Below, one piece after another: positions 8,555 to 63,109 of a DNA stretch of 64,000 nucleotides. How positions within the stretch are numbered: the first letter of the stretch is position 1; each line of letters opens with the position of its first letter. The notes under the pieces were generated by a model. That model was not told the origin of the DNA. It saw only the letters and a list, made by a program, of their open reading frames with translations, and made no database searches. Position numbers and translations under genes: made by a program. The stretch spans positions 186,001 through 250,000 of IMG/VR virus record IMGVR_UViG_3300033997_000243. The stretch is one strand, 5' to 3'.

Positions 8555-8962
8555 TCATTGAAACTTAACGGTCTTACCCAAATCTTTTGTATTTACTGAA
8601 TACACGGAAGTGGATGGTGGACGTTTGAATTTAATTTCTTTTTGATCCACTGAAACAATTTGTACGGTAGCCACAGGTTTCCATGCTGGTTTTGCTTTGT
8701 CTGTGCCGATTTGTGCAAGTCTCTGCATTACATAAGTATTTCCAACTTTAGGTAACTTAGGTTTTGGCTTGCCTGTGACAGAAACTTTGTATTTATCGGC
8801 TTCTTTTATATCAGCCGCTAATTCTTTTTCAGCTTCTTTCAACTTGAGTTTGGCGTCAGATACTTTATCCTTAGACTTGGCAACTTTTGCCAAAAGTTGA
8901 GCATACTTTTTATCGTCCTTTAATTTGGATGGAACCGAACTTGTTGACACTAATACCTTCAT
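8555..8962 (-). CDS. leader-family protein (MKVLVSTSS), basic coiled coil plus small beta-barrel
   Basis: start reassigned to 8962 by the AAGGA SD and the shared leader. Confidence 0.75.
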   Translation of the reverse strand: MKVLVSTSSVPSKLKDDKKYAQLLAKVAKSKDKVSDAKLKLKEAEKELAADIKEADKYKVSVTGKPKPKLPKVGNTYVMQRLAQIGTDKAKPAWKPVATVQIVSVDQKEIKFKRPPSTSVYSVNTKDLGKTVKFQ

Positions 8963-8972
8963 TTTTATTTCC

Positions 8973-9470
8973 TTATTTCGATTTCTTAACATCTTTTAAA
9001 ATATAGGCAGCTAATTCAGCATACCCACCAGAATTTTTACCAGCACGATCTACTGGTTTGCGTAATTCAGTTAGTTTGTCAATTTGCTTTTCAACAGCAG
9101 ACAATTCTTTACGTAATTGTTTTTGTTTTTCCTTTAATGCTTTAAGTTTAGCATCATTCAGAATTTTGTCTGTGGTTTCAATATTCTTTTCCTCAGAACT
9201 TTGCTTTGAAGGTTTTACATAACTATCAAATATAAACTTAGATCCAATTTCAAGTATTGGTATAACTTTGGTCACACTGGAATTACCAAAAGCATTCTTT
9301 ACCGTAATTTTTCCAGCACGTATGCTTTTAACTCGCACAGCTTTTTCGTGTTTAATCCACTGTCCTACAGTGCGGCCTCTTACCGCAAACTCTTGCTTTT
9401 CTCTCAGCCAATAAACTTTTCCAACTTCAGGCATACTACGCTTAGCGCTTGTTGAGACTAGAATTTTCAT
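8973..9470 (-). CDS. leader-family protein (MKILVSTSA), small beta-barrel plus coiled coil
   Basis: shared leader; AAGGA SD. Confidence 0.75.
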   Translation of the reverse strand: MKILVSTSAKRSMPEVGKVYWLREKQEFAVRGRTVGQWIKHEKAVRVKSIRAGKITVKNAFGNSSVTKVIPILEIGSKFIFDSYVKPSKQSSEEKNIETTDKILNDAKLKALKEKQKQLRKELSAVEKQIDKLTELRKPVDRAGKNSGGYAELAAYILKDVKKSK

Positions 9471-10051
9471 TTTGATTCCTTGAGTTTTTTAAACATTGCC
9501 TGAATCTGTTTTTGCTTTGGAGCAAGTTCATCATGTAGACGATTAAACTCTTCTTCAGACTTTGCTTTAAGAATTTTATAATGATACTTGTGAATTTCGA
9601 TCAATCTCATTATAACTTCTTTTTCACGCTCTACAGCATTTGGGCCATTTAGAGCTTGTGTGATTTCTCTAAGTGCTTGCTGTGCGAGATTAATCCAACG
9701 TGTTTTATCAACGTCAGGCTCCCAAGTATAAACAGCTTCCATATATTCATCGGAAATTTTTTGACCAGCTGTTCTTGGTTTGTCAGTAGTGGCCTTTGGT
9801 TTTCTTTTATTTGGATCAAATGGAATAACAGAAGATTTACTTGAATAGCCACCTATCTGTTTGAATTCTTTTTCCTTTGATGCCCAAACTTTAATATCAG
9901 CTTCACTCATTCGTCTGGCTAAAAAATCGTCCATTGCACTATCTGCCAGCTTAGCCACTTGTCTATCTTCAGATAGTGTTTCGCGTTCAATAGCTTTATA
10001 CGCCAATTGTCTGATTGTAGGTCTAGCACTAACGCTGACTAAAATCTTCAT
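9467..10051 (-). CDS. leader-family protein (MKILVSVSA), helical
   Basis: shared leader; TGATG coupling to the upstream stop. Confidence 0.75.
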   Translation of the reverse strand: MKILVSVSARPTIRQLAYKAIERETLSEDRQVAKLADSAMDDFLARRMSEADIKVWASKEKEFKQIGGYSSKSSVIPFDPNKRKPKATTDKPRTAGQKISDEYMEAVYTWEPDVDKTRWINLAQQALREITQALNGPNAVEREKEVIMRLIEIHKYHYKILKAKSEEEFNRLHDELAPKQKQIQAMFKKLKESK

Positions 10052-10650
10052 CACACATCCTTTAATAAGTCTGCCGAAATGAACTGTCCTTTTTCGAGAA
10101 CAGTTTTGGGAACTATTTTAATACTGGAGTCTAAATATTTAGCAATCTTTTTTGTTGCATATATTGCCTCAAGTTTTCCTTTTCCTTTCCCTATTATTTC
10201 TTTTTCCTTCCACACCCAAGGTTCATCACGCCAGTCGAAAATTTTTGACACACTAGGATCTTTGTTCTTGCTGAGTGAATTCAGATGATCGATCAGAGAA
10301 TCTATATCGAATGCTCCAGCTTCGACATCAACTTTATAAAGTACACCAAAATCTTGCATCGATTTTGATCCGTTTATCTTTATCTTGGCGAATTCCTCAG
10401 CAACCTCACGATCAATAGAAAAACTAGAATCACCAAATACTGCGGTTCTTTTTAAAGTTTCAAATGATTTGGCCGGAAGTTTCATTCCTCTATAAGCTGT
10501 TTGTTTCATTTTAGTTATAAACATTGGAAACGCGGCTTTCATTTTGGGAACTAGATCTTTGTCATTTGTATGAATCCAATCAGACAATAACTCAATCTTT
10601 TCTTTGTTTAAGGATAAGGACTCTGAACTTAAATTTACTAAAATCTTCAT
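10051..10650 (-). CDS. ADP-ribosyltransferase (R-S-E clade) with MKILVNLSS leader
   Basis: AYRG, SSFS..REVAEEFA, GVLYKV and EKEII motifs; start at 10650 by GAGGA SD and ATGA overlap. Confidence 0.7.
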   Translation of the reverse strand: MKILVNLSSESLSLNKEKIELLSDWIHTNDKDLVPKMKAAFPMFITKMKQTAYRGMKLPAKSFETLKRTAVFGDSSFSIDREVAEEFAKIKINGSKSMQDFGVLYKVDVEAGAFDIDSLIDHLNSLSKNKDPSVSKIFDWRDEPWVWKEKEIIGKGKGKLEAIYATKKIAKYLDSSIKIVPKTVLEKGQFISADLLKDV

Positions 10651-10925
10651 TTCATTTCCTCGAAAACGACATTCCAATCTTGTTCAAGTTGATGACGATC
10701 TGGATCAGTATCATAATAAGCGGCAATCGCATAAACTAATTCGCCAATATCACCGGTCAACGTAAATGTTTTATCGACAATTGCCATTGCTTTTGGCATT
10801 CTGGAAATTTTTACCTTTCTACCAACTGCTTTTATTTCGTCTGAAATTTGTTGAGTCGATGAATTCTTTTTAGCCTTAACATGAGCAACAAAAGTACGAG
10901 CAGACAAACTAACTAAGATTTTCAT
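10647..10925 (-). CDS. leader-family protein (MKILVSLSA)
   Basis: start at 10925 with GGAG SD; shared leader. Confidence 0.7.
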   Translation of the reverse strand: MKILVSLSARTFVAHVKAKKNSSTQQISDEIKAVGRKVKISRMPKAMAIVDKTFTLTGDIGELVYAIAAYYDTDPDRHQLEQDWNVVFEEMK

Positions 10926-11238
10926 TAGATTCTCCAGAATAGTTTCCAAGACTTGAGTAACTATAATAAAGTGTTACACAAGTTGGACTGCCTGTACTAA
11001 TGTGACCATCATTTAATTGTGCGCCAAACTTTTCATTAAATTGCCTTGGAATATCAACACACATTAGTTGAGGCACCAACTCTTTCTGAATTTCACGATC
11101 AGTAACCAGCAGTGAAAGATAAATGGCTCCGCGTAAATCTTGTTTTGGTGGGTCAATAGCTACTTTTAAAAATGAAGCACCTACTTTACTAAGTGCTGGA
11201 ATGCTTGCAAATGCCTCAACTAATTTTTCTGTACTCAT
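10909..11238 (-). CDS. hypothetical protein (no leader)
   Basis: AAGGTG SD. Confidence 0.6.
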   Translation of the reverse strand: MSTEKLVEAFASIPALSKVGASFLKVAIDPPKQDLRGAIYLSLLVTDREIQKELVPQLMCVDIPRQFNEKFGAQLNDGHISTGSPTCVTLYYSYSSLGNYSGESNENLS

Positions 11239-11247
11239 ATCACACCT

Positions 11248-11736
11248 TTAATAACTATCAACAGCGGAATAGTCTATGTTATTCAAATCAAGTACGTGAG
11301 TAATGCCTTTAGCTACAGATAGATCGACTGGATCAATTGGATCATTAATTCGTATTGCTGCATTTATCAGATCATATGCAGACCTGAATTTATACTCATT
11401 GCTTACGGTTATAGTTAAATCTTGTAAAATTTCTTTAGCTTTATTAAATGCCGCAGCAGAAACTTCTTGACGGATTGTTTTAATTCTAGGAAACGACTCT
11501 CCTGTATGGAAATTTTTAATTGCTTCAGTTAATTCAGAGAATTGTTCAGGGAGAATTGTATGCAATCGTTTACCCAAAGAATTGCAAACTTTTTCAGTCA
11601 AATAGATAATGTTTCTTAACTCTGGAGTTGGCCCTTTGACTTTCTTAATAAGAGAACTTAATTGTTTATTGAATTTGGTAATCTGTTCACCTGTTGTTAA
11701 GTGCTTAGGTGCGCTTAAACTTACTAAGATCTTCAT
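11248..11736 (-). CDS. leader-family protein (MKILVSLSA), paralogue of 11781..12254
   Basis: shared leader; AFNKAKEIL and DPVDLS..KGITHVL match the neighbour. Confidence 0.75.
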   Translation of the reverse strand: MKILVSLSAPKHLTTGEQITKFNKQLSSLIKKVKGPTPELRNIIYLTEKVCNSLGKRLHTILPEQFSELTEAIKNFHTGESFPRIKTIRQEVSAAAFNKAKEILQDLTITVSNEYKFRSAYDLINAAIRINDPIDPVDLSVAKGITHVLDLNNIDYSAVDSY

Positions 11737-11752
11737 TTTTCTTTCCTTAACG

Positions 11753-11777
11753 AAAATATGGGCCGAAGCCCTATTTT
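11753..11777 (-). terminator. C(UUCG)G hairpin between genes (leaky terminator or stabiliser)
   Basis: GGGC-TTCG-GCCC followed by ATATTTT. Confidence 0.55.
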
Positions 11778-11780
11778 ATA

Positions 11781-12254
11781 CTACACCTTTATTCCGGCCA
11801 TTTTCAGTGCATCAGTAACGCCTTTATATTTTGAAAGGTCACTTACTGGATCTACGTTATCTAAAAGCCTTTTACAGGCGATTGCTAAATTTTTAGCGGT
11901 TTCCCAAGTTTCAGCTTCTGATCCAGTAAGCTTTGTTTGTGCAACAATTTCTTTCAATTTTTTGAAAGCTGTTTGACCTAACTTCAAAAACTTCGGATCT
12001 ACATTGCTGTAATCAGGAGTTATATTTGAGGCACTTGTATCACGAACTTGATCTGTAATTTCCACCATCAAATCGTAAGATTTTTTCAGGGAAGGGTGGC
12101 CACGAAATCCATTACACAACATTGTGCAATTGTTTAATATTGCCCAATGATCAGAATCAAAATGCTTAAACTTTTTGAAATACTTTTTAACAGCGGCATC
12201 TGTCGTAGCCAAAGTAACTTCAGATTTTGCACTTAAGCTTACTAAAATTTTCAT
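11781..12254 (-). CDS. leader-family protein (MKILVSLSA), paralogue of 11248..11736
   Basis: shared leader; AFKKLKEIV and DPVSDLSKYKGVTDAL. Confidence 0.75.
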   Translation of the reverse strand: MKILVSLSAKSEVTLATTDAAVKKYFKKFKHFDSDHWAILNNCTMLCNGFRGHPSLKKSYDLMVEITDQVRDTSASNITPDYSNVDPKFLKLGQTAFKKLKEIVAQTKLTGSEAETWETAKNLAIACKRLLDNVDPVSDLSKYKGVTDALKMAGIKV

Positions 12255-12273: not shown

Positions 12274-12289
12274 AGGGGCCGAAGCCCCT
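12274..12289 (-). terminator. C(UUCG)G hairpin between genes
   Basis: AGGGGC-TTCG-GCCCCT. Confidence 0.6.
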
Positions 12290-30272: not shown

Positions 30273-30292
30273 AAAGGGGCTTCGGCCCCTTT
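30273..30292 (+). terminator. C(UUCG)G hairpin, possibly bidirectional terminator
   Basis: AAAGGGGC-TTCG-GCCCCTTT. Confidence 0.65.
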
Positions 30293-46492: not shown

Positions 46493-47059
46493 ATGAAAAT
46501 TAATAAAGCTTTTGCTGATCAGATGCTACTTATCTATGGGCAGAATTATGCAGCCACAACTTTGACTCAAACTTCAGGAGTTATATTTAGTTTGTGGAGT
46601 GGGGCAGAACTTTCTCAGACTGAAATGAATGTCATTCGTGACACATTCACAGACGCAAATGGAATTATTGCAGGTAATTGGCCAGCTACTTTAATGGGGC
46701 CAAATGGAAGAGTTGAATTGGCACGTTTATACGTACCAACTTTCTCGCAAAGATCGGATAATAGCGAACCTAATGCTCTAAGAAAAAAATTTGAACTATC
46801 AAAAATAACAAGTTTAATGACTATTCTTGCGGCGGGTAACGCAGGATCATTTACATTATCCATAACAGGATCTAGTTGGACTGGATGGACATCTGCCGCA
46901 GCAAACTCTAGCCGTGTTATATATAATGGTTCAGTAGGAAATTTAGAAAGTAATGCTGATATTAAGTTTCCTACAACTTCAATAGCTTTGGATAGTAAAA
47001 TTAAACCTACCGACATAAATTTCCAATTTAATTTCCCAAGTTTAGAAATGATTTGGTAA
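46493..47059 (+). CDS. array member, short scaffold type
   Basis: start MKINKA; SLWSG; GSVG...S.ADI. Confidence 0.6.
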   Translation: MKINKAFADQMLLIYGQNYAATTLTQTSGVIFSLWSGAELSQTEMNVIRDTFTDANGIIAGNWPATLMGPNGRVELARLYVPTFSQRSDNSEPNALRKKFELSKITSLMTILAAGNAGSFTLSITGSSWTGWTSAAANSSRVIYNGSVGNLESNADIKFPTTSIALDSKIKPTDINFQFNFPSLEMIW

Positions 47060-47074
47060 TAGAGGCGACACACA

Positions 47075-47602
47075 ATGAAAATGAATACTGGTGCTTTATT
47101 AGCAAGTACATATGCTTTGCACAGAAACGATCTTGCAAATACTACGGCTGTTTCAGTTAGTTTGTTTACTGGTGGCCCATTAACTCAAGCCGAAGAAGAT
47201 TATATAAACAGTGCTACTGTTACAGCAGCTTCAACAGGTTTGATTAGTCACAGTTTAGCCAGAACAAATTTAATTTCAACACGTACTGAACTTGGTCAAC
47301 TGTTTTTACCTACTTTCACTCAGAAGAAAATAGGTGGGAATGTACATGAACGCATTTGGATGTTCACACAACGCACAGAAGAAATGACTGGATTAGCTAA
47401 TGGAGATCCAACACTTGCAATGATTTCACTTCATGGTGGTGCAGCTGTTTATACAGCTGGAAACATTTGCAGAATGTTAATGTTGTGTTCAGTAGGTAAC
47501 GTAGGTTCAGGTGCTGAATTTGAACACAATGGCCCAATAGTAACTGGACAGCGTTACAAAATAAACGACTTCAAGTTTACCATTCAAAACTTGTTAGGTT
47601 AA
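47075..47602 (+). CDS. array member, short scaffold type
   Basis: SLFTGG; ELG.L.LPTF.Q shared with 46493; SVG..GSGAE. Confidence 0.6.
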   Translation: MKMNTGALLASTYALHRNDLANTTAVSVSLFTGGPLTQAEEDYINSATVTAASTGLISHSLARTNLISTRTELGQLFLPTFTQKKIGGNVHERIWMFTQRTEEMTGLANGDPTLAMISLHGGAAVYTAGNICRMLMLCSVGNVGSGAEFEHNGPIVTGQRYKINDFKFTIQNLLG

Positions 47603-47606
47603 GTTT

Positions 47607-48242
47607 ATGGGAAATGTTTATACTCATAATCATGGAACGGAACCTAAAGTCGTTCAAGTATACAAGCCATTTTTCAACAATAGCTTAGCTAACGGCCCAT
47701 TACGTCAATTTATTTCCTACCCACAATCAAGCGCACCTACTGCACGAATAGGTCAGTTTGATGGATATGAGTGGGGATATAACACAGACGGATCGCAGTA
47801 CGGAATAGTGCGATTTAATGGAGTAGCAGTCCCAAATCAAGCTGAAACTTTTGCTATGTTGCAATCAAAATATTCGATTGGTGTAAATCAAAATATTAAT
47901 ACCAATCCGATATTTTATTCAGTTTACGCAAAGACTGATCTGGAAGATCCAATAGAGAGTGTTGTATGCGAATATAATGCTTCCAACCACAAAGTATTTT
48001 CATATTCAAATGGAACAAGAACTTGGTCAGCCACTATAGATGGAATAACTTATGGATGGCGCAGCTATTCTAACATAGAAGGTGCGGCTGGCTACTTGAA
48101 TGATTTTACGATTAACGGTCAAGGCTCTGCTAATATTGCAGTGCGAGATTATATTTTAAATTTATGCACTGTAGGTTCAGTTGTTCAATCTGGTGAGCCA
48201 ATAAGAAGTGCCGTCTGCGTTAAAACGTATTCGGTATCTTAA
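47607..48242 (+). CDS. hypothetical aromatic-rich protein with an internal duplication
   Basis: A.I..FDGYEWGY and ATIDGITYGW repeats. Confidence 0.55.
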   Translation: MGNVYTHNHGTEPKVVQVYKPFFNNSLANGPLRQFISYPQSSAPTARIGQFDGYEWGYNTDGSQYGIVRFNGVAVPNQAETFAMLQSKYSIGVNQNINTNPIFYSVYAKTDLEDPIESVVCEYNASNHKVFSYSNGTRTWSATIDGITYGWRSYSNIEGAAGYLNDFTINGQGSANIAVRDYILNLCTVGSVVQSGEPIRSAVCVKTYSVS

Positions 48243-51685: not shown

Positions 51686-51699
51686 GGGGCTTCGGCCCC
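51686..51699 (+). terminator. C(UUCG)G hairpin
   Basis: GGGGC-TTCG-GCCCC with no clear U-tract. Confidence 0.45.
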
Positions 51700-55406: not shown

Positions 55407-56279
55407 TCAGTCATTCAATATTTGTTTATTGAATATAAATAAGTATTCATTGTCTGATGGAACAGGGCTACCGAACTCACACTGAACAACCTTTGGAAAT
55501 GCAATTCCTTGTAAGCAAAAACCAATTGAGTCCAAGTCCAAAGCTTCCGTCAGCTCTACTATATTATTCAAATCTTTTGAGTTTGGTGCAATTCGAGTTA
55601 CCCAAAATTTAGTCTGTCTCTTATCAAGTTTAATGCCTTCAAAGATGCCAGTGATTCTTTCTATAGTGGTATAAGAATCCAAGAAAAACAGTTTTGGTTG
55701 TTTTTCGCGCCACTCTTTATATACCCTTATATCCAGCAATGTAGGATCTGCTGGAATAACTGCTGAAATAGATTTAACGCTGATTGCGAAATATTCCGAA
55801 GATGCAGTTCCCATGTGAAAAGCAAAGGAAATAGGTGCGTTAAAGAAATCACACAATTTCTTAGTAACGTGCTTTATCTTTGGTCGATTTAAAATTTCTT
55901 GATTTTGTGAATAAGAAATATGTTTGGCCAAATGTGCAGGTTTTGTATTATGCTTAGCACGAATAGCCTCAATATTATTTTCAGCGCGATTTATTTCACT
56001 TTTAAAAATTGATTCAAGTGAAACGCTATGCAAATCACACACTGATAATAATGTAATCAGTGTACCTGCTGCTTCCTGGTCTACTTCACCTTTTGGTCGG
56101 CTGTAAACGTGATCTAAAATACTATCCATTTGATCCCGCGATAATCCTATAGCCTGACACAATTCTACACATTCTTCTGCAAAACGAAAACTGCGTTCAC
56201 TCTTGTCATTTGTGTGTTCAACACCAAAACAATTAGTAAGCCAGTTTCTAACCCTGACTTTCATCTGCTGTAAATTCAT
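55407..56279 (-). CDS. MazG-like nucleotide pyrophosphohydrolase fused to an unknown domain
   Basis: RF.EE..EL.QA and V.QE..G motifs; start MNLQQ by GGAG SD. Confidence 0.7.
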   Translation of the reverse strand: MNLQQMKVRVRNWLTNCFGVEHTNDKSERSFRFAEECVELCQAIGLSRDQMDSILDHVYSRPKGEVDQEAAGTLITLLSVCDLHSVSLESIFKSEINRAENNIEAIRAKHNTKPAHLAKHISYSQNQEILNRPKIKHVTKKLCDFFNAPISFAFHMGTASSEYFAISVKSISAVIPADPTLLDIRVYKEWREKQPKLFFLDSYTTIERITGIFEGIKLDKRQTKFWVTRIAPNSKDLNNIVELTEALDLDSIGFCLQGIAFPKVVQCEFGSPVPSDNEYLFIFNKQILND

Positions 56280-56769
56280 CAACTTTCTCCTGTGTGCCAA
56301 TCACATCCGACATAAATTGTTTTGCTTTTAACACAACATGAGTGCAGCCTTGTTGCTCAACACAACTGGTTAAAAAGTTTGCCCAGTTCTTGTTCATCAT
56401 GGTTAAGAATTCTTTTGGAGATCCGCGCTTAGCGTAACGCTGCATATACTCCACTTTTAAATTCTTTTCAGGATAAACCAGAGTGAAGTCAATTCCAGCA
56501 TCTACCAAAGCTTGACGCACAGCATCATGCGAACTAACAAGCAAATAATCACATTGGTAACGAGCTTCTTCAATGTGTTTAATGTAATTTGCCGGAAAAT
56601 CATCTTTAGGGAATTTTGAACTGTCGCTATCCATAACAGTAAAGCCTAATTCCTGTTGACGATTGAAAAAGTGAGTTTTGCCAATCCCAGGAAATCCACA
56701 AATAATTTGAGCGCTTTTTTGCGGAACTGACTTAGGTTTGTTTTTGTTTAATGATACCAAAATTTTCAT
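56248..56769 (-). CDS. P-loop nucleotide-kinase-like protein with MKILVSL leader
   Basis: IICGFPGIGKT, DSDSS.F and R...RG motifs. Confidence 0.75.
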   Translation of the reverse strand: MKILVSLNKNKPKSVPQKSAQIICGFPGIGKTHFFNRQQELGFTVMDSDSSKFPKDDFPANYIKHIEEARYQCDYLLVSSHDAVRQALVDAGIDFTLVYPEKNLKVEYMQRYAKRGSPKEFLTMMNKNWANFLTSCVEQQGCTHVVLKAKQFMSDVIGTQEKVDEFTADESQG

Positions 56770-56783
56770 AATTGTTTCCTTCC

Positions 56784-56990
56784 CTAGTTTTTAACAAGAG
56801 GAATATTAATCGATAAATCTTGCACAGTGGCGTCACGATATACTTTGTGTTGATTCATATTTGAAGCCAACTCAATTTGATATACAAGTAAAACAGTGCC
56901 ATCTTCTAAAGTGTGAGGGCGCAATCGTGAATTTCCTGTAGGAAAATATTTAGTTTCTGGATGCGGTGGAACATTAGAGCTTGTTGACAT
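56784..56990 (-). CDS. small hypothetical phage protein
   Basis: AAGGA SD; packed operon. Confidence 0.6.
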   Translation of the reverse strand: MSTSSNVPPHPETKYFPTGNSRLRPHTLEDGTVLLVYQIELASNMNQHKVYRDATVQDLSINIPLVKN

Positions 56991-60753: not shown

Positions 60754-61428
60754 TTAGTTTTTGTTTTTGACTTTGCTGTAATACTTAGGAACTGAAGTCA
60801 AACTCAGTCTTTTGAAAAAATTATGATCTCGAACAACAGATGCAGGAAGGAAAACTGTTAAGTTGTGGCGAGTACCATCAAAAGACCGATTTAAAGCATC
60901 TTCTATTTCTTCCCAAGGTGTACCATAAGAAGAATCGTTACCGAAAAAATAAAGTCCGATGTTGGTCGGTTTATCAAAATCTTCCAACAATTGATTAAAG
61001 CCAGATTCTACAGAATCCAGATCAACGTGGTGAACTTTATTATCTGGAACTTTGTGTCCAAAAGTATTTTGCACGAATATTGTAGTAATATCGAGTTTGC
61101 GTCCGGCATTTCTCTGGTCAACTATGTTAGGTAACTCTGAAGCCGGATAGCAAGAATATTTAAAATGCTTTCCTAGTGCAGTACGTCCGGTGAATTTGCA
61201 AGCAGCTTCTGCTTTAATAAGTTCAGGTATAAACTTATGCAAAGAACCCACAAGACCTTTAGGAACATGGGACGTATTTGAGGCAACAACCAAATCAGAA
61301 AAATTATTTCTTACGCTGTGTACTATAGCGTCCAAGAAATGATCGGTTATCATATAGTTAACTGAATTTGTTTTGCAGCCCAAGCCACCTTTAACCAGCT
61401 GTTGAAGTCTTTGTTCTAATGTTGTCAT
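60754..61428 (-). CDS. divergent macro-domain protein
   Basis: VV.SN....KGL...L, LG, FVQ..FG, D.D....F..L, G.PW..I...L and LTVF match the Poa1p/TARG-like macro fold. Confidence 0.55.
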   Translation of the reverse strand: MTTLEQRLQQLVKGGLGCKTNSVNYMITDHFLDAIVHSVRNNFSDLVVASNTSHVPKGLVGSLHKFIPELIKAEAACKFTGRTALGKHFKYSCYPASELPNIVDQRNAGRKLDITTIFVQNTFGHKVPDNKVHHVDLDSVESGFNQLLEDFDKPTNIGLYFFGNDSSYGTPWEEIEDALNRSFDGTRHNLTVFLPASVVRDHNFFKRLSLTSVPKYYSKVKNKN

Positions 61429-61442
61429 AATATTTCCCCTCG

Positions 61443-62411
61443 CTAACAGTTGAATGTTTCTTTGAACTCAAACTGTTTTTCTACAGAACGAACTTTTCGT
61501 TCGACTTTTTTAGACCAAGGTTCCAACAGATAGGTCGATAATCGTGTATCTACCTTTAAGTCTTTCTTGATCTCAACTAAATCTCTGCACATAAAACAAA
61601 GATCTTGATAAAATGGATCTTTGAGTTTTTTTCCCAAAGCGCCTTTATGTTCTGCTTGGAATATAGAATCAAGATCTTCATACTGCATCAACAATTCGAT
61701 AGCTGTTTTATCTCCGACGCCTGGAATGCCTGGAATGTTATCGCTCTGATCTCCTGTCAGTGCCAAAAGATCCACAAACATTGGAGGAATAACGCCATAC
61801 TTTTCAAGACAACTTTGATATGTAATATCTTGTTCTTCACTGTTGTCTTGTTTTGGTAAACGTAACCTTGTATCAGGTTTTAATAACTGAGCGAAATCAC
61901 CGTCACGACTCCAAATATATTTACGACATTTTAGTTGGAAACACAAGCTTCCTATAATATCGTCGGCCTCACCGTGAACAGAAGTTATAGGGTGAATTCC
62001 ACGCGCAGTCAAAATATCAATAATCATTTTTAATTGTGGGCGAAGTGCAATACTTTTAGCATCGTCACCGTCAGAAAAACGATTACCTTTATAACCACTT
62101 AAATATTTTTCTGGAAATTTAGCAGCATCTTCTCCGCGTAAACGCTTTTCCATGAAATCGCGCATTATTTTCTTGCGCTTGTCCGAACCTTTTTTGTGGT
62201 CAAATACAACAGCTAAAATAACTTGACCTCGTGACGCTAATCTTCTGCGAATAAGAGCATTTAGCATAACGCAAAAAGTTTTAGCTGCTCCAGTAGGTGT
62301 TCCGTCTTTTAACGTCATTCCCTTATTTTTTAAACTGGAGTAATATGCTCGATTGAGCCAATTGTGGCCGTCAATAATATCTATAACCGGATTAGGTTTG
62401 ATTTTACTCAT
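61443..62411 (-). CDS. 5'-3' exonuclease / flap endonuclease (PolI N-terminal, T5 D15-like)
   Basis: IDG.N...RAYY, YK.NR, EADD.IG, SRDGD..QL and GD.SDNIPG.PGVG.KTA. Confidence 0.95.
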   Translation of the reverse strand: MSKIKPNPVIDIIDGHNWLNRAYYSSLKNKGMTLKDGTPTGAAKTFCVMLNALIRRRLASRGQVILAVVFDHKKGSDKRKKIMRDFMEKRLRGEDAAKFPEKYLSGYKGNRFSDGDDAKSIALRPQLKMIIDILTARGIHPITSVHGEADDIIGSLCFQLKCRKYIWSRDGDFAQLLKPDTRLRLPKQDNSEEQDITYQSCLEKYGVIPPMFVDLLALTGDQSDNIPGIPGVGDKTAIELLMQYEDLDSIFQAEHKGALGKKLKDPFYQDLCFMCRDLVEIKKDLKVDTRLSTYLLEPWSKKVERKVRSVEKQFEFKETFNC

Positions 62412-63109
62412 TTGATTATCCCATGTTCGGATAGTTGAATTCTTTCCAATTTATCCGAATCGACCATTAGATTGTATACTAATGGATTTACAGTTTGCGC
62501 TACGTAAGGAGTTTCAGTTTCTTTAGATGCTTTTAACCAACGTAAAGATTTAGCATTTACGTGAACAACTCGTTTTGGCTTAACTTGTGTAATAAGCCAC
62601 TTTTCAAAAAAGCAACCAACGCTGCGATGACACTCAGCAAATTCTTCAAGCTTTTTCGGAGCGAGTATTCCAGAAAGCGTTTTGTATTCTGAAATAATAG
62701 ATCCATTTTCTACTGTATGTATGTCCACAAACTGAAAACTTTTTCCTATAGTCCCCATATTCATAGGAACGCCAGCAAAAATAAAAGATCTTATGTCCGA
62801 TTCTGTTTTCATGTTTTCTAACAACAGACAGAGAACTTTATTCCCACCAAAGAAATGCTTTATGTTTTCAACAGTCAGGTCATAAATATTGTTTATGACA
62901 ACAAGATCTGTTATCACAGGTTTGAACGGCACATCTTCTGGATTAGCGCATAAATAAACGGAATACTTATCACGCACAAATTTTCTTTTCTTTAAAGGAT
63001 TTGGCCAGCTGCCTCTGATTATATATTGCCTTCCATGTATGTCACAGAAATCTGGCCCTTGCTTTTTAGCTGTGTTACTGCAACCACACGAATATAAAGT
63101 GCATATCAT
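62408..63109 (-). CDS. hypothetical protein with an N-terminal Zn-binding motif
   Basis: CGC...C..H; AGGAG SD. Confidence 0.6.
   Translation of the reverse strand: MICTLYSCGCSNTAKKQGPDFCDIHGRQYIIRGSWPNPLKKRKFVRDKYSVYLCANPEDVPFKPVITDLVVINNIYDLTVENIKHFFGGNKVLCLLLENMKTESDIRSFIFAGVPMNMGTIGKSFQFVDIHTVENGSIISEYKTLSGILAPKKLEEFAECHRSVGCFFEKWLITQVKPKRVVHVNAKSLRWLKASKETETPYVAQTVNPLVYNLMVDSDKLERIQLSEHGIIK

What the first reader, a model, noticed from the sequence alone, without database searches (positions are those of the whole stretch)
56248..56769. Eighth leader copy, 44 kb away, grafted on a P-loop kinase (MKILVSLNK)
Seen: MKILVSL plus a basic linker precedes the kinase core (IICGFPGIGKT), and the second Ser of S-x-S is Asn. 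An unlinked enzyme of a recognisable family carrying the tag supports a portable signal rather than simple paralogy. It may be packaged but not cleaved.
Basis: partly seen in the sequence, partly recalled or inferred. Interest (0 to 1): 0.7.

Follow-up and report, generated by a model that had tools for sequence, protein, structure and literature searches.

The report
Head-targeting leader on a phage kinase
A small P-loop kinase of an uncultured 320-kb jumbo phage starts with the same 8-9-residue peptide (MKILVSL..) as about 20 unrelated, very basic proteins of that phage, and this peptide most likely loads them into the assembling phage head, much as the T4 capsid-targeting sequence does.

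Summary
Window 56248-56769(-) encodes a 173-aa P-loop kinase with three parts. Residues 1-9 (MKILVSLNK) are the leader, residues 10-20 are a basic linker, and residues 21-160 are a confidently folded kinase core. The leader is not part of the kinase family. More than 250 phage homologues align only from residue ~18-22, and most start 4-9 residues before the P-loop.

The window lies in a 319.5-kb jumbo phage of the PaBG/Lu11/NCTB ("Lupandier") group. Genome-wide, 13 proteins carry MKILVSLSA-type leaders and 7 or more carry a related MKIKVFVSxS type. The motif is strictly N-terminal and is encoded with different synonymous codons. Beyond residue 12 the carriers are unrelated, apart from one pair.

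The tag was not grafted on recently. Kinase orthologues in other uncultured jumbo phages carry their own genome's leader variant.

Leader genes sit directly downstream of the head-maturation protease gene in five genomes. In two genomes the kinase itself lies between the protease and major capsid genes. Leader proteins are very basic (median pI 9.5 against 6.5). The phiR1-37 homologue is annotated as a virion protein.

Best reading: a prohead-targeting leader that works like the T4 CTS, with the kinase as an encapsidated enzyme. Packaging and cleavage are inferred, not shown.

The parts
56248..56769 (-). Whole ORF of the leader-tagged P-loop kinase (173 aa plus stop)
   Evidence: phrog_4182 E 2.5e-59; AF2 mean pLDDT 84.6
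56743..56769 (-). Leader, residues 1-9 (MKILVSLNK)
   Evidence: 7 of 9 residues identical to the genome consensus MKILVSLSA. All 9 residues are identical in orthologues of 97% and 82% identity, while the linker diverges.
56710..56742 (-). Basic linker, residues 10-20 (NKPKSVPQKSA), predicted disordered and variable among orthologues
   Evidence: pLDDT below 50 for residues 1-14, block mean 60 for residues 11-20; alignment A1
56290..56709 (-). Kinase core, residues 21-160. It holds Walker A (GFPGIGKT), the invariant DSDSS motif and the R111/R115 pair.
   Evidence: alignment A1 invariant columns; Foldseek matches to AK6/Fap7, shikimate and guanylate kinases from query residue ~19
56251..56289 (-). 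Acidic C-terminal tail, residues 161-173, present only in the closest orthologues
   Evidence: pLDDT below 50 for residues 164-172
56776..56784 (-). Shine-Dalgarno-like GGGAAGGAA upstream of the ATG
11781..12254 (-). Leader gene 1 of the tandem array (MKILVSLSAK), 157 aa
11248..11736 (-). Leader gene 2 (MKILVSLSAP), 162 aa. It is the only detectable paralogue of gene 1.
   Evidence: E 1.7e-8
10647..10925 (-). Leader gene 3 (MKILVSLSAR), 92 aa
10051..10650 (-). Leader gene 4 (MKILVNLSSE), 199 aa
9467..10051 (-). Leader gene 5 (MKILVSVSAR), 194 aa
8973..9470 (-). Leader gene 6 (MKILVSTSAK), 165 aa
8555..8962 (-). Leader gene 7 (MKVLVSTSSV), 135 aa

Best explanation
The first 8-9 residues (M-K-[IV]-x-[IVL]-x-hydrophobic-S/N) form a short strand-like leader that is not part of the kinase fold. 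It is a prohead (capsid) targeting peptide shared by about 20 otherwise unrelated, lysine-rich proteins of this jumbo phage.

Proposed sequence of events:
1. The leader docks each precursor onto the assembling prohead core, next to the head-maturation protease.
2. The protein is enclosed by the shell and stays with the packaged DNA.
3. It is probably ejected into the next host.

On this reading the kinase is an encapsidated enzyme, available before any phage gene is expressed. Its substrate is unknown.

Shown here:
- the leader exists and is conserved at the protein level;
- it is separable from the kinase core;
- it is shared by unrelated proteins;
- it varies with the genome;
- leader genes are syntenic with the head protease gene;
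- the carriers are basic.

Inferred: the docking, the encapsidation and the ejection.

Open: whether the leader is cut off. The kinase leader and linker of this phage contain no Glu, whereas PaBG-type orthologues have x-[SA]-E followed by A.
For: 1. Separability. Homologues align only from residue 18-22, and residues 1-14 are unstructured in the AF2 model.

2. Peptide-level selection. Ser6 and Ser8 use both AGY and TCN codons, Leu and Val codons vary, and the upstream DNA is not conserved. 18 of 19 motif hits are N-terminal.

3. Unrelated cargo. Only 1 similar pair among 19 proteins beyond residue 12.

4. Old and co-varying.
- Kinases of G006 (MKVLLSLAK), G008 (MKVMLSLAG), G007 (MKISISSKS) and PaBG-type phages (MKINVPLSSAE, MKITFPLKSE) all carry leader-like starts.
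- For G000, G006 and G007, each kinase leader scores best against its own genome's leader profile.

5. Head context.
- The head maturation protease (phrog_18299, E 7e-88) is followed directly by leader genes in G000, G002, G007 and NCTB. In G003 looser leader-like starts flank it.
- The MCP gene (phrog_2522) follows a few kb downstream.
- In G006 and G008 the kinase gene lies between the protease and MCP genes.

6. Composition. Leader proteins have median pI 9.5 against 6.5 and Lys 13.4% against 7.1% in the rest of the genome (p about 1e-7 and 5e-9).

7. Related head proteins.
- One leader protein matches phrog_220 'minor head protein and DNA pilot' (E 4e-15).
- The kinase homologue g133 of phiR1-37 is annotated 'phage structural protein', among other virion proteins.

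8. The MCP propeptide linker reads FLSLSAE in G000, which resembles the end of the leader. It lies about where the PaBG MCP loses ~20% of its mass on maturation (PMC7412058).

9. Precedent. The T4 CTS is the only feature shared by diverse internal proteins (PMC3012670, PMC5694885).
Against: - There is no direct evidence of packaging. The phage is uncultured, so no virion proteome exists.
- The window's seven-gene array and the kinase of this genome lie outside the head module, among nucleotide-metabolism and unknown genes on the minus strand.
- The kinase is the least basic leader protein (pI 7.65).
- The leader has no conserved Glu, so it does not fit the cleavage rule of T4, phiKZ or SPN3US proteases.
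- The complex prediction of protease with kinase residues 1-30 gave no answer.
- Part of the co-variation (I to V, V to L) could follow genome G+C: 37.6% in G000, 50.6% in G006 and 34.6% in G007.
- The G002 kinase (70% identical) has no leader, so the tag can be lost.
Confidence: 0.55

Rival explanations
1. The leader is a shared address or fate signal unrelated to the capsid. It could be an N-terminal degron for timed proteolysis, or a docking strand for a phage chaperone, a membrane site or another intracellular compartment. On this reading the kinase acts in the infected cell and is merely co-regulated with the other tagged proteins.
For: - The tag is short, N-terminal, conserved at the protein level and shared by unrelated proteins, which fits any peptide signal.
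- In this genome the kinase and the seven-gene array lie among non-structural genes.
- From memory, not tested: the Met-basic-hydrophobic x3 start resembles one class of ClpX N-terminal recognition motifs.
Against: - It does not explain why leader genes sit directly after the head protease gene in five genomes.
- It does not explain why the kinase sits between the protease and MCP genes in G006 and G008.
- It does not explain the strong basic, Lys-rich bias, the phrog_220 head-protein match or the virion annotation of phiR1-37 g133.
- The hydrophobic run has only about 5 residues and there is no lipobox, so a Sec or lipoprotein signal is excluded.
Confidence: 0.17
2. The shared start is a translation-initiation cassette. 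MK plus A/T-rich codons would give efficient initiation or a favourable nascent peptide. It would be spread by recombination among highly expressed small genes and would have no role in the finished protein.
For: The leader starts ATG AAA ATT TTA, which is A/T-rich, and each copy has a good Shine-Dalgarno sequence. Two of the array genes are preceded by the same GGGCTTCGGCCC hairpin.
Against: - Codons differ freely while the amino acids stay the same, including switches between the two Ser codon families.
- The upstream DNA is not conserved.
- Conservation runs to residue 8-9, further than an initiation effect would need.
- The same peptide pattern is kept with G+C-richer codons in G006 (50.6% G+C).
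- Orthologues keep a leader of variable length that ends in S-x-S.
Confidence: 0.08
3. The kinase N-terminus resembles the leader by chance, or it is an ordinary family-specific N-terminal extension of this kinase.
For: Many homologues have some N-terminal extension of 10-25 residues of variable sequence.
Against: - 7 of 9 residues are identical to the genome consensus.
- The nine leader residues are invariant between orthologues whose linkers have diverged.
- Each kinase leader fits its own genome's profile best.
- The motif is essentially absent from internal positions genome-wide.
Confidence: 0.02

Closest known systems
Capsid targeting sequence (CTS) of phage T4 internal proteins IPI-III and Alt
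   Same: - A 10-20-residue N-terminal peptide starting MK is the only feature shared by diverse, fast-evolving, often basic proteins.
- It directs them into the prohead core (PMC3012670, PMC5694885).
- The cargo includes an enzyme.
   Different: - There is no sequence similarity.
- The T4 CTS is removed after Glu at an L/I-x-E site by gp21, and this leader has no conserved Glu.
- The phage has no detectable T4-type gp23 or gp21 Pfam match (the control genomes did not respond either).
- Packaging is not shown here.
N-terminal propeptides of ejection proteins in phiKZ-like giant phages (for example SPN3US gp53/gp54)
   Same: Divergent head proteins keep an identical short N-terminus (15 residues in gp53/gp54), interpreted as CTS-like (PMC5694885). 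These are also jumbo phages with many packaged proteins.
   Different: - Those propeptides are mostly longer than 100 residues and are cut at A/S-x-E.
- The shared N-terminus links paralogues, not unrelated proteins.
- They belong to a different phage lineage.
Yersinia phage phiR1-37 g133
   Same: It belongs to the same kinase family (50% identity over residues 21-159). It is annotated as a phage structural protein and lies among other virion protein genes.
   Different: It starts MTLIEQLLNDK and then the core, with no leader of this kind, so it must enter the virion by another route.
PaBG_00151 and the P0010/P0012 kinases (PaBG-type)
   Same: Same kinase core (55-57% identity). The N-terminus follows the same M-K-I-x-hydrophobic pattern (MKINVPLSSAE, MKITFPLKSE).
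   Different: - The leader ends in x-[SA]-E followed by A, like the cleavage sites of giant-phage proteases.
- It is followed by an acidic linker of about 140 residues rather than a short basic one.
- The gene lies among replication genes.
Encapsulin cargo-loading peptides (from general knowledge, not tested here)
   Same: A short terminal peptide is sufficient to load unrelated enzymes into an HK97-fold shell.
   Different: It is usually C-terminal, is not cleaved, occurs in bacterial nanocompartments rather than a virus, and has a different sequence.

Membership tests
P-loop NMP-kinase-like phage kinase (phrog_4182) | Significant profile match over the whole core | tested here: met
   phrog_4182 E 2.5e-59, residues 16-161. 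Pfam AAA_33 is only weak, 17.6 bits against a cut-off of 27.
P-loop NMP-kinase-like phage kinase (phrog_4182) | Walker A GxxxxGK[ST] and the family's invariant residues | tested here: met
   GFPGIGKT is present. D47, S48, D49, S50, R85, R111 and R115 are invariant in 27 sequences.
P-loop NMP-kinase-like phage kinase (phrog_4182) | Kinase fold | tested here: met
   The AF2 core has pLDDT above 90. Foldseek gives probability 1.0 but TM only ~0.5 to AK6/Fap7, shikimate, guanylate and PNKP kinases. The sub-family and substrate are not resolved.
P-loop NMP-kinase-like phage kinase (phrog_4182) | Phosphotransfer activity and substrate | not testable with these tools
   Needs an enzyme assay.
T4-type capsid targeting sequence system | Short N-terminal peptide shared by otherwise unrelated proteins | tested here: met
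T4-type capsid targeting sequence system | Tagged proteins are present in proheads or virions | not testable with these tools
   Only indirect support: head-module synteny, basic composition, phrog_220 and phiR1-37 g133.
T4-type capsid targeting sequence system | Leader ends at a prohead-protease site after Glu (L/I-x-E, or S/A/G-x-E in giant phages) | tested here: not met
   There is no Glu in residues 1-39 of this kinase, and most type-A leaders have none in the first nine residues. Some type-B and PaBG-type leaders do have S-E or A-E.
T4-type capsid targeting sequence system | gp21-family prohead protease encoded | tested here: inconclusive
   A head maturation protease is present (phrog_18299, E 7e-88; 51% identical to the PaBG 'prohead core protein protease'). 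PF03420 gave no match, no PDB relative was found and the AF2 model was too poor.
Sec or lipoprotein signal peptide | Hydrophobic core of 7-15 residues; lipobox Cys for lipoproteins | tested here: not met
   The hydrophobic run is ILV-S-L only, the leader is 8-11 residues in total, and there is no conserved Cys.

The most novel reading that the evidence does not exclude
The leader is a self-sufficient and possibly uncleaved strand 'zip code'. It would load a whole set of about 20 basic effectors and enzymes, including this kinase, into the heads of a widespread clade of uncultured jumbo phages. Its receptor would co-evolve with it genome by genome. Reading N-termini alone would then predict the complete injected protein set of these phages, and the tag could be reused to package foreign proteins.
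Probability: 0.3. Interest if true: 0.8.

Novelty: new variant of a known kind. Interest (0 to 1): 0.62.

Why it matters
Apart from T4 and a few phiKZ-like phages, we cannot tell from sequence which jumbo-phage proteins travel inside the capsid and enter the host with the DNA. A short, recognisable leader would make that protein set readable directly from metagenomic genomes of this clade.

It would also:
- flag a kinase family, also annotated as a virion protein in phiR1-37, as a candidate injected enzyme;
- give a handle for finding the receptor in the prohead;
- allow foreign proteins to be packaged.

A full-text search for the peptide found no paper containing it, and the PaBG group paper does not mention such a leader.

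Tried and rejected
- Megablast of the locus against phage records: no match.
- Pfam on the seven array proteins and several other leader proteins: nothing significant except DUF5754 on one.
- PF03420 (gp21) and PF07068 (gp23) in the own genome: no match, but the control genomes did not respond either, so this is uninformative.
- Complex prediction of the head protease with kinase residues 1-30: verdict 'no answer', not used as evidence. That row was left out and not sent anywhere else.
- AF2 of the protease from a 5-row alignment: pLDDT 37.5, unusable, so no fold search was run. Searches of solved structures with the protease found nothing meaningful.
- A collection-wide scan for the back-translated leader was not possible, because the pattern had too few specified bases.
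- The MCP N-terminus of G000 (MKTNLQVGAS) looked leader-like, but MCP orthologues do not share it, so it was rejected.
- I suspected that two leader proteins with a YRG motif (window 10051-10650 and genome 102847) are ADP-ribosyltransferases. No profile supports this, so it is left open.
- PaBG, NCTB, an Erwinia and a Dickeya jumbo phage lack the exact MKILVS and MKIxVxVS forms. NCTB and PaBG have looser versions.

Full report
**What is there.** Window 56248-56769(-) is a 173-aa ORF with an ATG start seven bases downstream of a GGGAAGGAA Shine-Dalgarno-like stretch. It reads MKILVSLNK, then NKPKSVPQKSA, then QIICGFPGIGKT and onward. No ATG other than codon 1 lies upstream of the P-loop, so the extension must be translated. 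An AlphaFold2 model built on 27 homologues gives pLDDT above 90 for residues 21-160 and below 50 for residues 1-14 and 164-172. Foldseek places the core among P-loop NMP-kinase-like folds (AK6/Fap7, shikimate, guanylate and PNKP kinases). The alignments start at query residue ~19 and at target residue 2-4, and TM is only about 0.5. The sequence family is phrog_4182, of unknown function (E 2.5e-59, residues 16-161). Walker A, an invariant DSDSS motif and conserved arginines are intact. The substrate is unknown.

**The genome.** The window is bases 186001-250000 of a 319,518-bp IMG/VR virus record with direct terminal repeats and 37.6% G+C. Its tail and baseplate proteins are most similar (32-36% identity) to phage NCTB, PaBG, and the Erwinia and Dickeya jumbo phages. 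This is the 'Lupandier group' of PMC7412058. No close cultured relative exists.

**The leader is real, N-terminal and selected as a peptide.** Seven tandem genes at window 8555-12254(-) begin MKILVS[LTV]S[AS], MKILVNLSS or MKVLVSTSS.
- Genome-wide there are 13 type-A copies including the kinase.
- There are at least 7 copies of a related type B, MKI[KRQ]VF[VI]SxS or MKVNILISES.
- Both types share the pattern M-K-[IV]-x-[IVL]-x-hydrophobic-S.
- In all six-frame ORFs of 50 aa or more, 18 of 19 motif hits directly follow a Met.
- The copies use different synonymous codons. Both Ser codon families appear at positions 6 and 8, and the upstream DNA is not conserved.
- After the first 12 residues are removed, only one pair among 19 leader proteins shows any BLASTP similarity.

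**The leader is not part of the kinase family.**
- tblastn hits in 256 phage records (PaBG, phiR1-37, T5-like Salmonella and Escherichia phages, and Aeromonas, Acinetobacter, Bacillus and Staphylococcus phages) begin at query residue 18-22.
- In 80 IMG/VR loci most homologues start 4-9 residues before the [SC][GA]FPG motif, for example MKTKVYSAFPG.
- Only the 97% and 82% orthologues share MKILVSLNK. In them the nine leader residues are invariant, while the linker has substitutions and an indel.

**The tag is old, not a recent graft.** Kinase orthologues in other uncultured jumbo phages have leader-like starts:
- MKVLLSLAK in G006 (275 kb);
- MKVMLSLAG in G008;
- MKISISSKS in G007 (287 kb);
- MKINVPLSSAE in PaBG, as annotated for PaBG_00151, and MKITFPLKSE or MKITFPLTAE in two PaBG-like metagenomic proteins. 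Each of these is followed by an acidic linker of about 140 residues.

G006 and G007 have leader systems of their own, with consensus MKVMLSLA. and MKILISLS. respectively. Each kinase leader scores best against its own genome's profile, with 7/9, 7/9 and 6/9 identities on the diagonal against 3-6/9 off it. Part of this could follow G+C content, so I treat it as supportive and not decisive. The G002 kinase (70% identical) has no leader, so the tag can be lost.

**Link to the head.**
- G000 encodes a head maturation protease at genome 61325-62119 (phrog_18299, E 7e-88). It is 51% identical to the PaBG 'prohead core protein protease'.
- Leader genes follow it at 63049, 63466, 64331, 65125, 65466, 66201 and 67630, and a looser one follows at 70964.
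- Then come a virion structural protein, the major head protein (phrog_2522, E 2e-82, genome 75253-76347) and the tail sheath.
- The same protease-then-leader-genes order is seen in G002, G007 and NCTB. In G003 looser leader-like starts flank the protease.
- In G006 and G008 the kinase gene itself lies between the protease and MCP genes.
- One leader protein (genome 65125) matches phrog_220 'minor head protein and DNA pilot' (E 4e-15).
- All 19 leader proteins have pI above 7.6. The median is 9.5 against 6.5 for the rest of the genome, and Lys content is 13.4% against 7.1% (Mann-Whitney p about 1e-7 and 5e-9). This is what proteins co-packaged with DNA would show.
- In Yersinia phage phiR1-37 the kinase homologue g133 carries the annotation 'phage structural protein' and lies among other virion protein genes.
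- The variable linker before the conserved MCP core reads FLSLSAEQK in G000, FASLSNSDK in G007 and FASMSNADK in G002. This lies about 20% into the protein, which matches the mass loss reported for the PaBG MCP on maturation. The resemblance to the end of the leader was noticed post hoc and is only a lead.

**Mechanism proposed.** The leader is a prohead-targeting peptide that works like the T4 CTS. The CTS is the only feature shared by the diverse T4 internal proteins and Alt, and it suffices to encapsidate foreign proteins (PMC3012670, PMC5694885). The kinase would be an encapsidated, probably ejected, enzyme. Whether the leader is removed is open. This kinase has no Glu before residue 40 and most type-A leaders have none. 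Many type-B and NCTB leaders have S-E-S, and PaBG-type kinases have [SA]-E-A, which resembles the sites of giant-phage proteases. Asn at position 8 also occurs in other leaders (MKILISLNS, MKVLVSLNS) and is within normal variation.

**Rivals.**
- Another kind of address or degron (0.17). It fits the peptide-level conservation but not the head synteny, the basic composition or the virion annotation.
- A translation-initiation cassette (0.08). The codon variability and the genome-specific peptide variants argue against it.
- Chance, or an ordinary family extension (0.02). Searches exclude it.

**What failed.** The complex prediction gave no answer. The protease model was too poor to search with. 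No Pfam family explains the array proteins. These results are not used as evidence.

**Verdict.** It behaves like a CTS but is not a member of the T4 system. The sequence differs, the Glu cleavage rule is not met and the protease family is unresolved. I found no earlier description of it. I rate it a new variant of a known kind, with interest about 0.6.

Noticed in passing
outside the window: G000 genome 63049-67630 and 104837 (loci L141, L143): A second leader sub-type, MKI[KRQ]VF[VI]S[EQS]S, occurs on at least 7 genes. Most lie directly downstream of the head maturation protease gene (61325-62119) and upstream of the major head protein gene (75253-76347). A type-A leader gene (65125) sits among them.
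   Followed up: yes
outside the window: G000 genome 75253-76347 (L142:5253-6347): The variable linker before the conserved major capsid protein core reads FLSLSAEQK, resembling the end of the leader. It lies about where the PaBG MCP is reported to lose ~20% of its mass. It may be the protease site.
   Followed up: partly
window 11760-11771 and 12276-12287 (-), 30277-30288 and 51687-51698 (+): An identical GGGCTTCGGCCC hairpin (UUCG loop) occurs 4 times against 0.02 expected. Two copies sit just upstream of the first two leader genes of the array, and two sit after large structural genes. They are likely terminators or RNA-stabilising hairpins.
   Followed up: partly
window 10051-10650 (-) and G000 genome 102847-103341 (L143:12847-13341): Two leader proteins contain a Y-R-G motif followed by Ser-rich and Glu-rich stretches, reminiscent of ADP-ribosyltransferases (T4 Alt is a packaged one). 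No Pfam or PHROG profile supports this.
   Followed up: partly
L173:2901-3779 (PaBG_00151) and proteins P0010, P0012: PaBG-type orthologues of the kinase carry a leader-like start ending in [SA]-E-A. This is followed by an extremely acidic linker of ~140 residues, the opposite charge to the short basic linker here.
   Followed up: partly
alignment A2 (head protease orthologues of six genomes): The protease N-termini share a Ser-rich S-S-S-F-D-I motif (ELSLSFSVG in G006) that looks like the end of the leader. It may be an autoprocessing or targeting site. The protease also has a conserved CxxC...CxH cluster.
   Followed up: no
outside the window: G000 genome 318727-318936 (L111:1727-1936), with orthologues in G002, G007, NCTB and G006: A 69-aa leader protein with a KKKGGKKKTGRSLML stretch is conserved across five genomes, while its leader changes form and length (MKVLVSVS, MKVTLHLDKLVSES, MKIDLNKGVESQS).
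   Followed up: partly
window 56248-56300: The kinase 3' end overlaps the longest version (TTG start) of the downstream ORF 55407-56300 by 53 bases. The true start of that gene, whose N-terminal domain matches phrog_8593 and phrog_14118, is probably further in.
   Followed up: no
L186 (G008 46822-47829): In G008 the kinase reading frame runs on in frame from an upstream 178-codon ORF, with no stop between them. In G006 the two are separate genes overlapping by 4 bases. This could be a fusion, a sequencing frameshift or an internal start.
   Followed up: no
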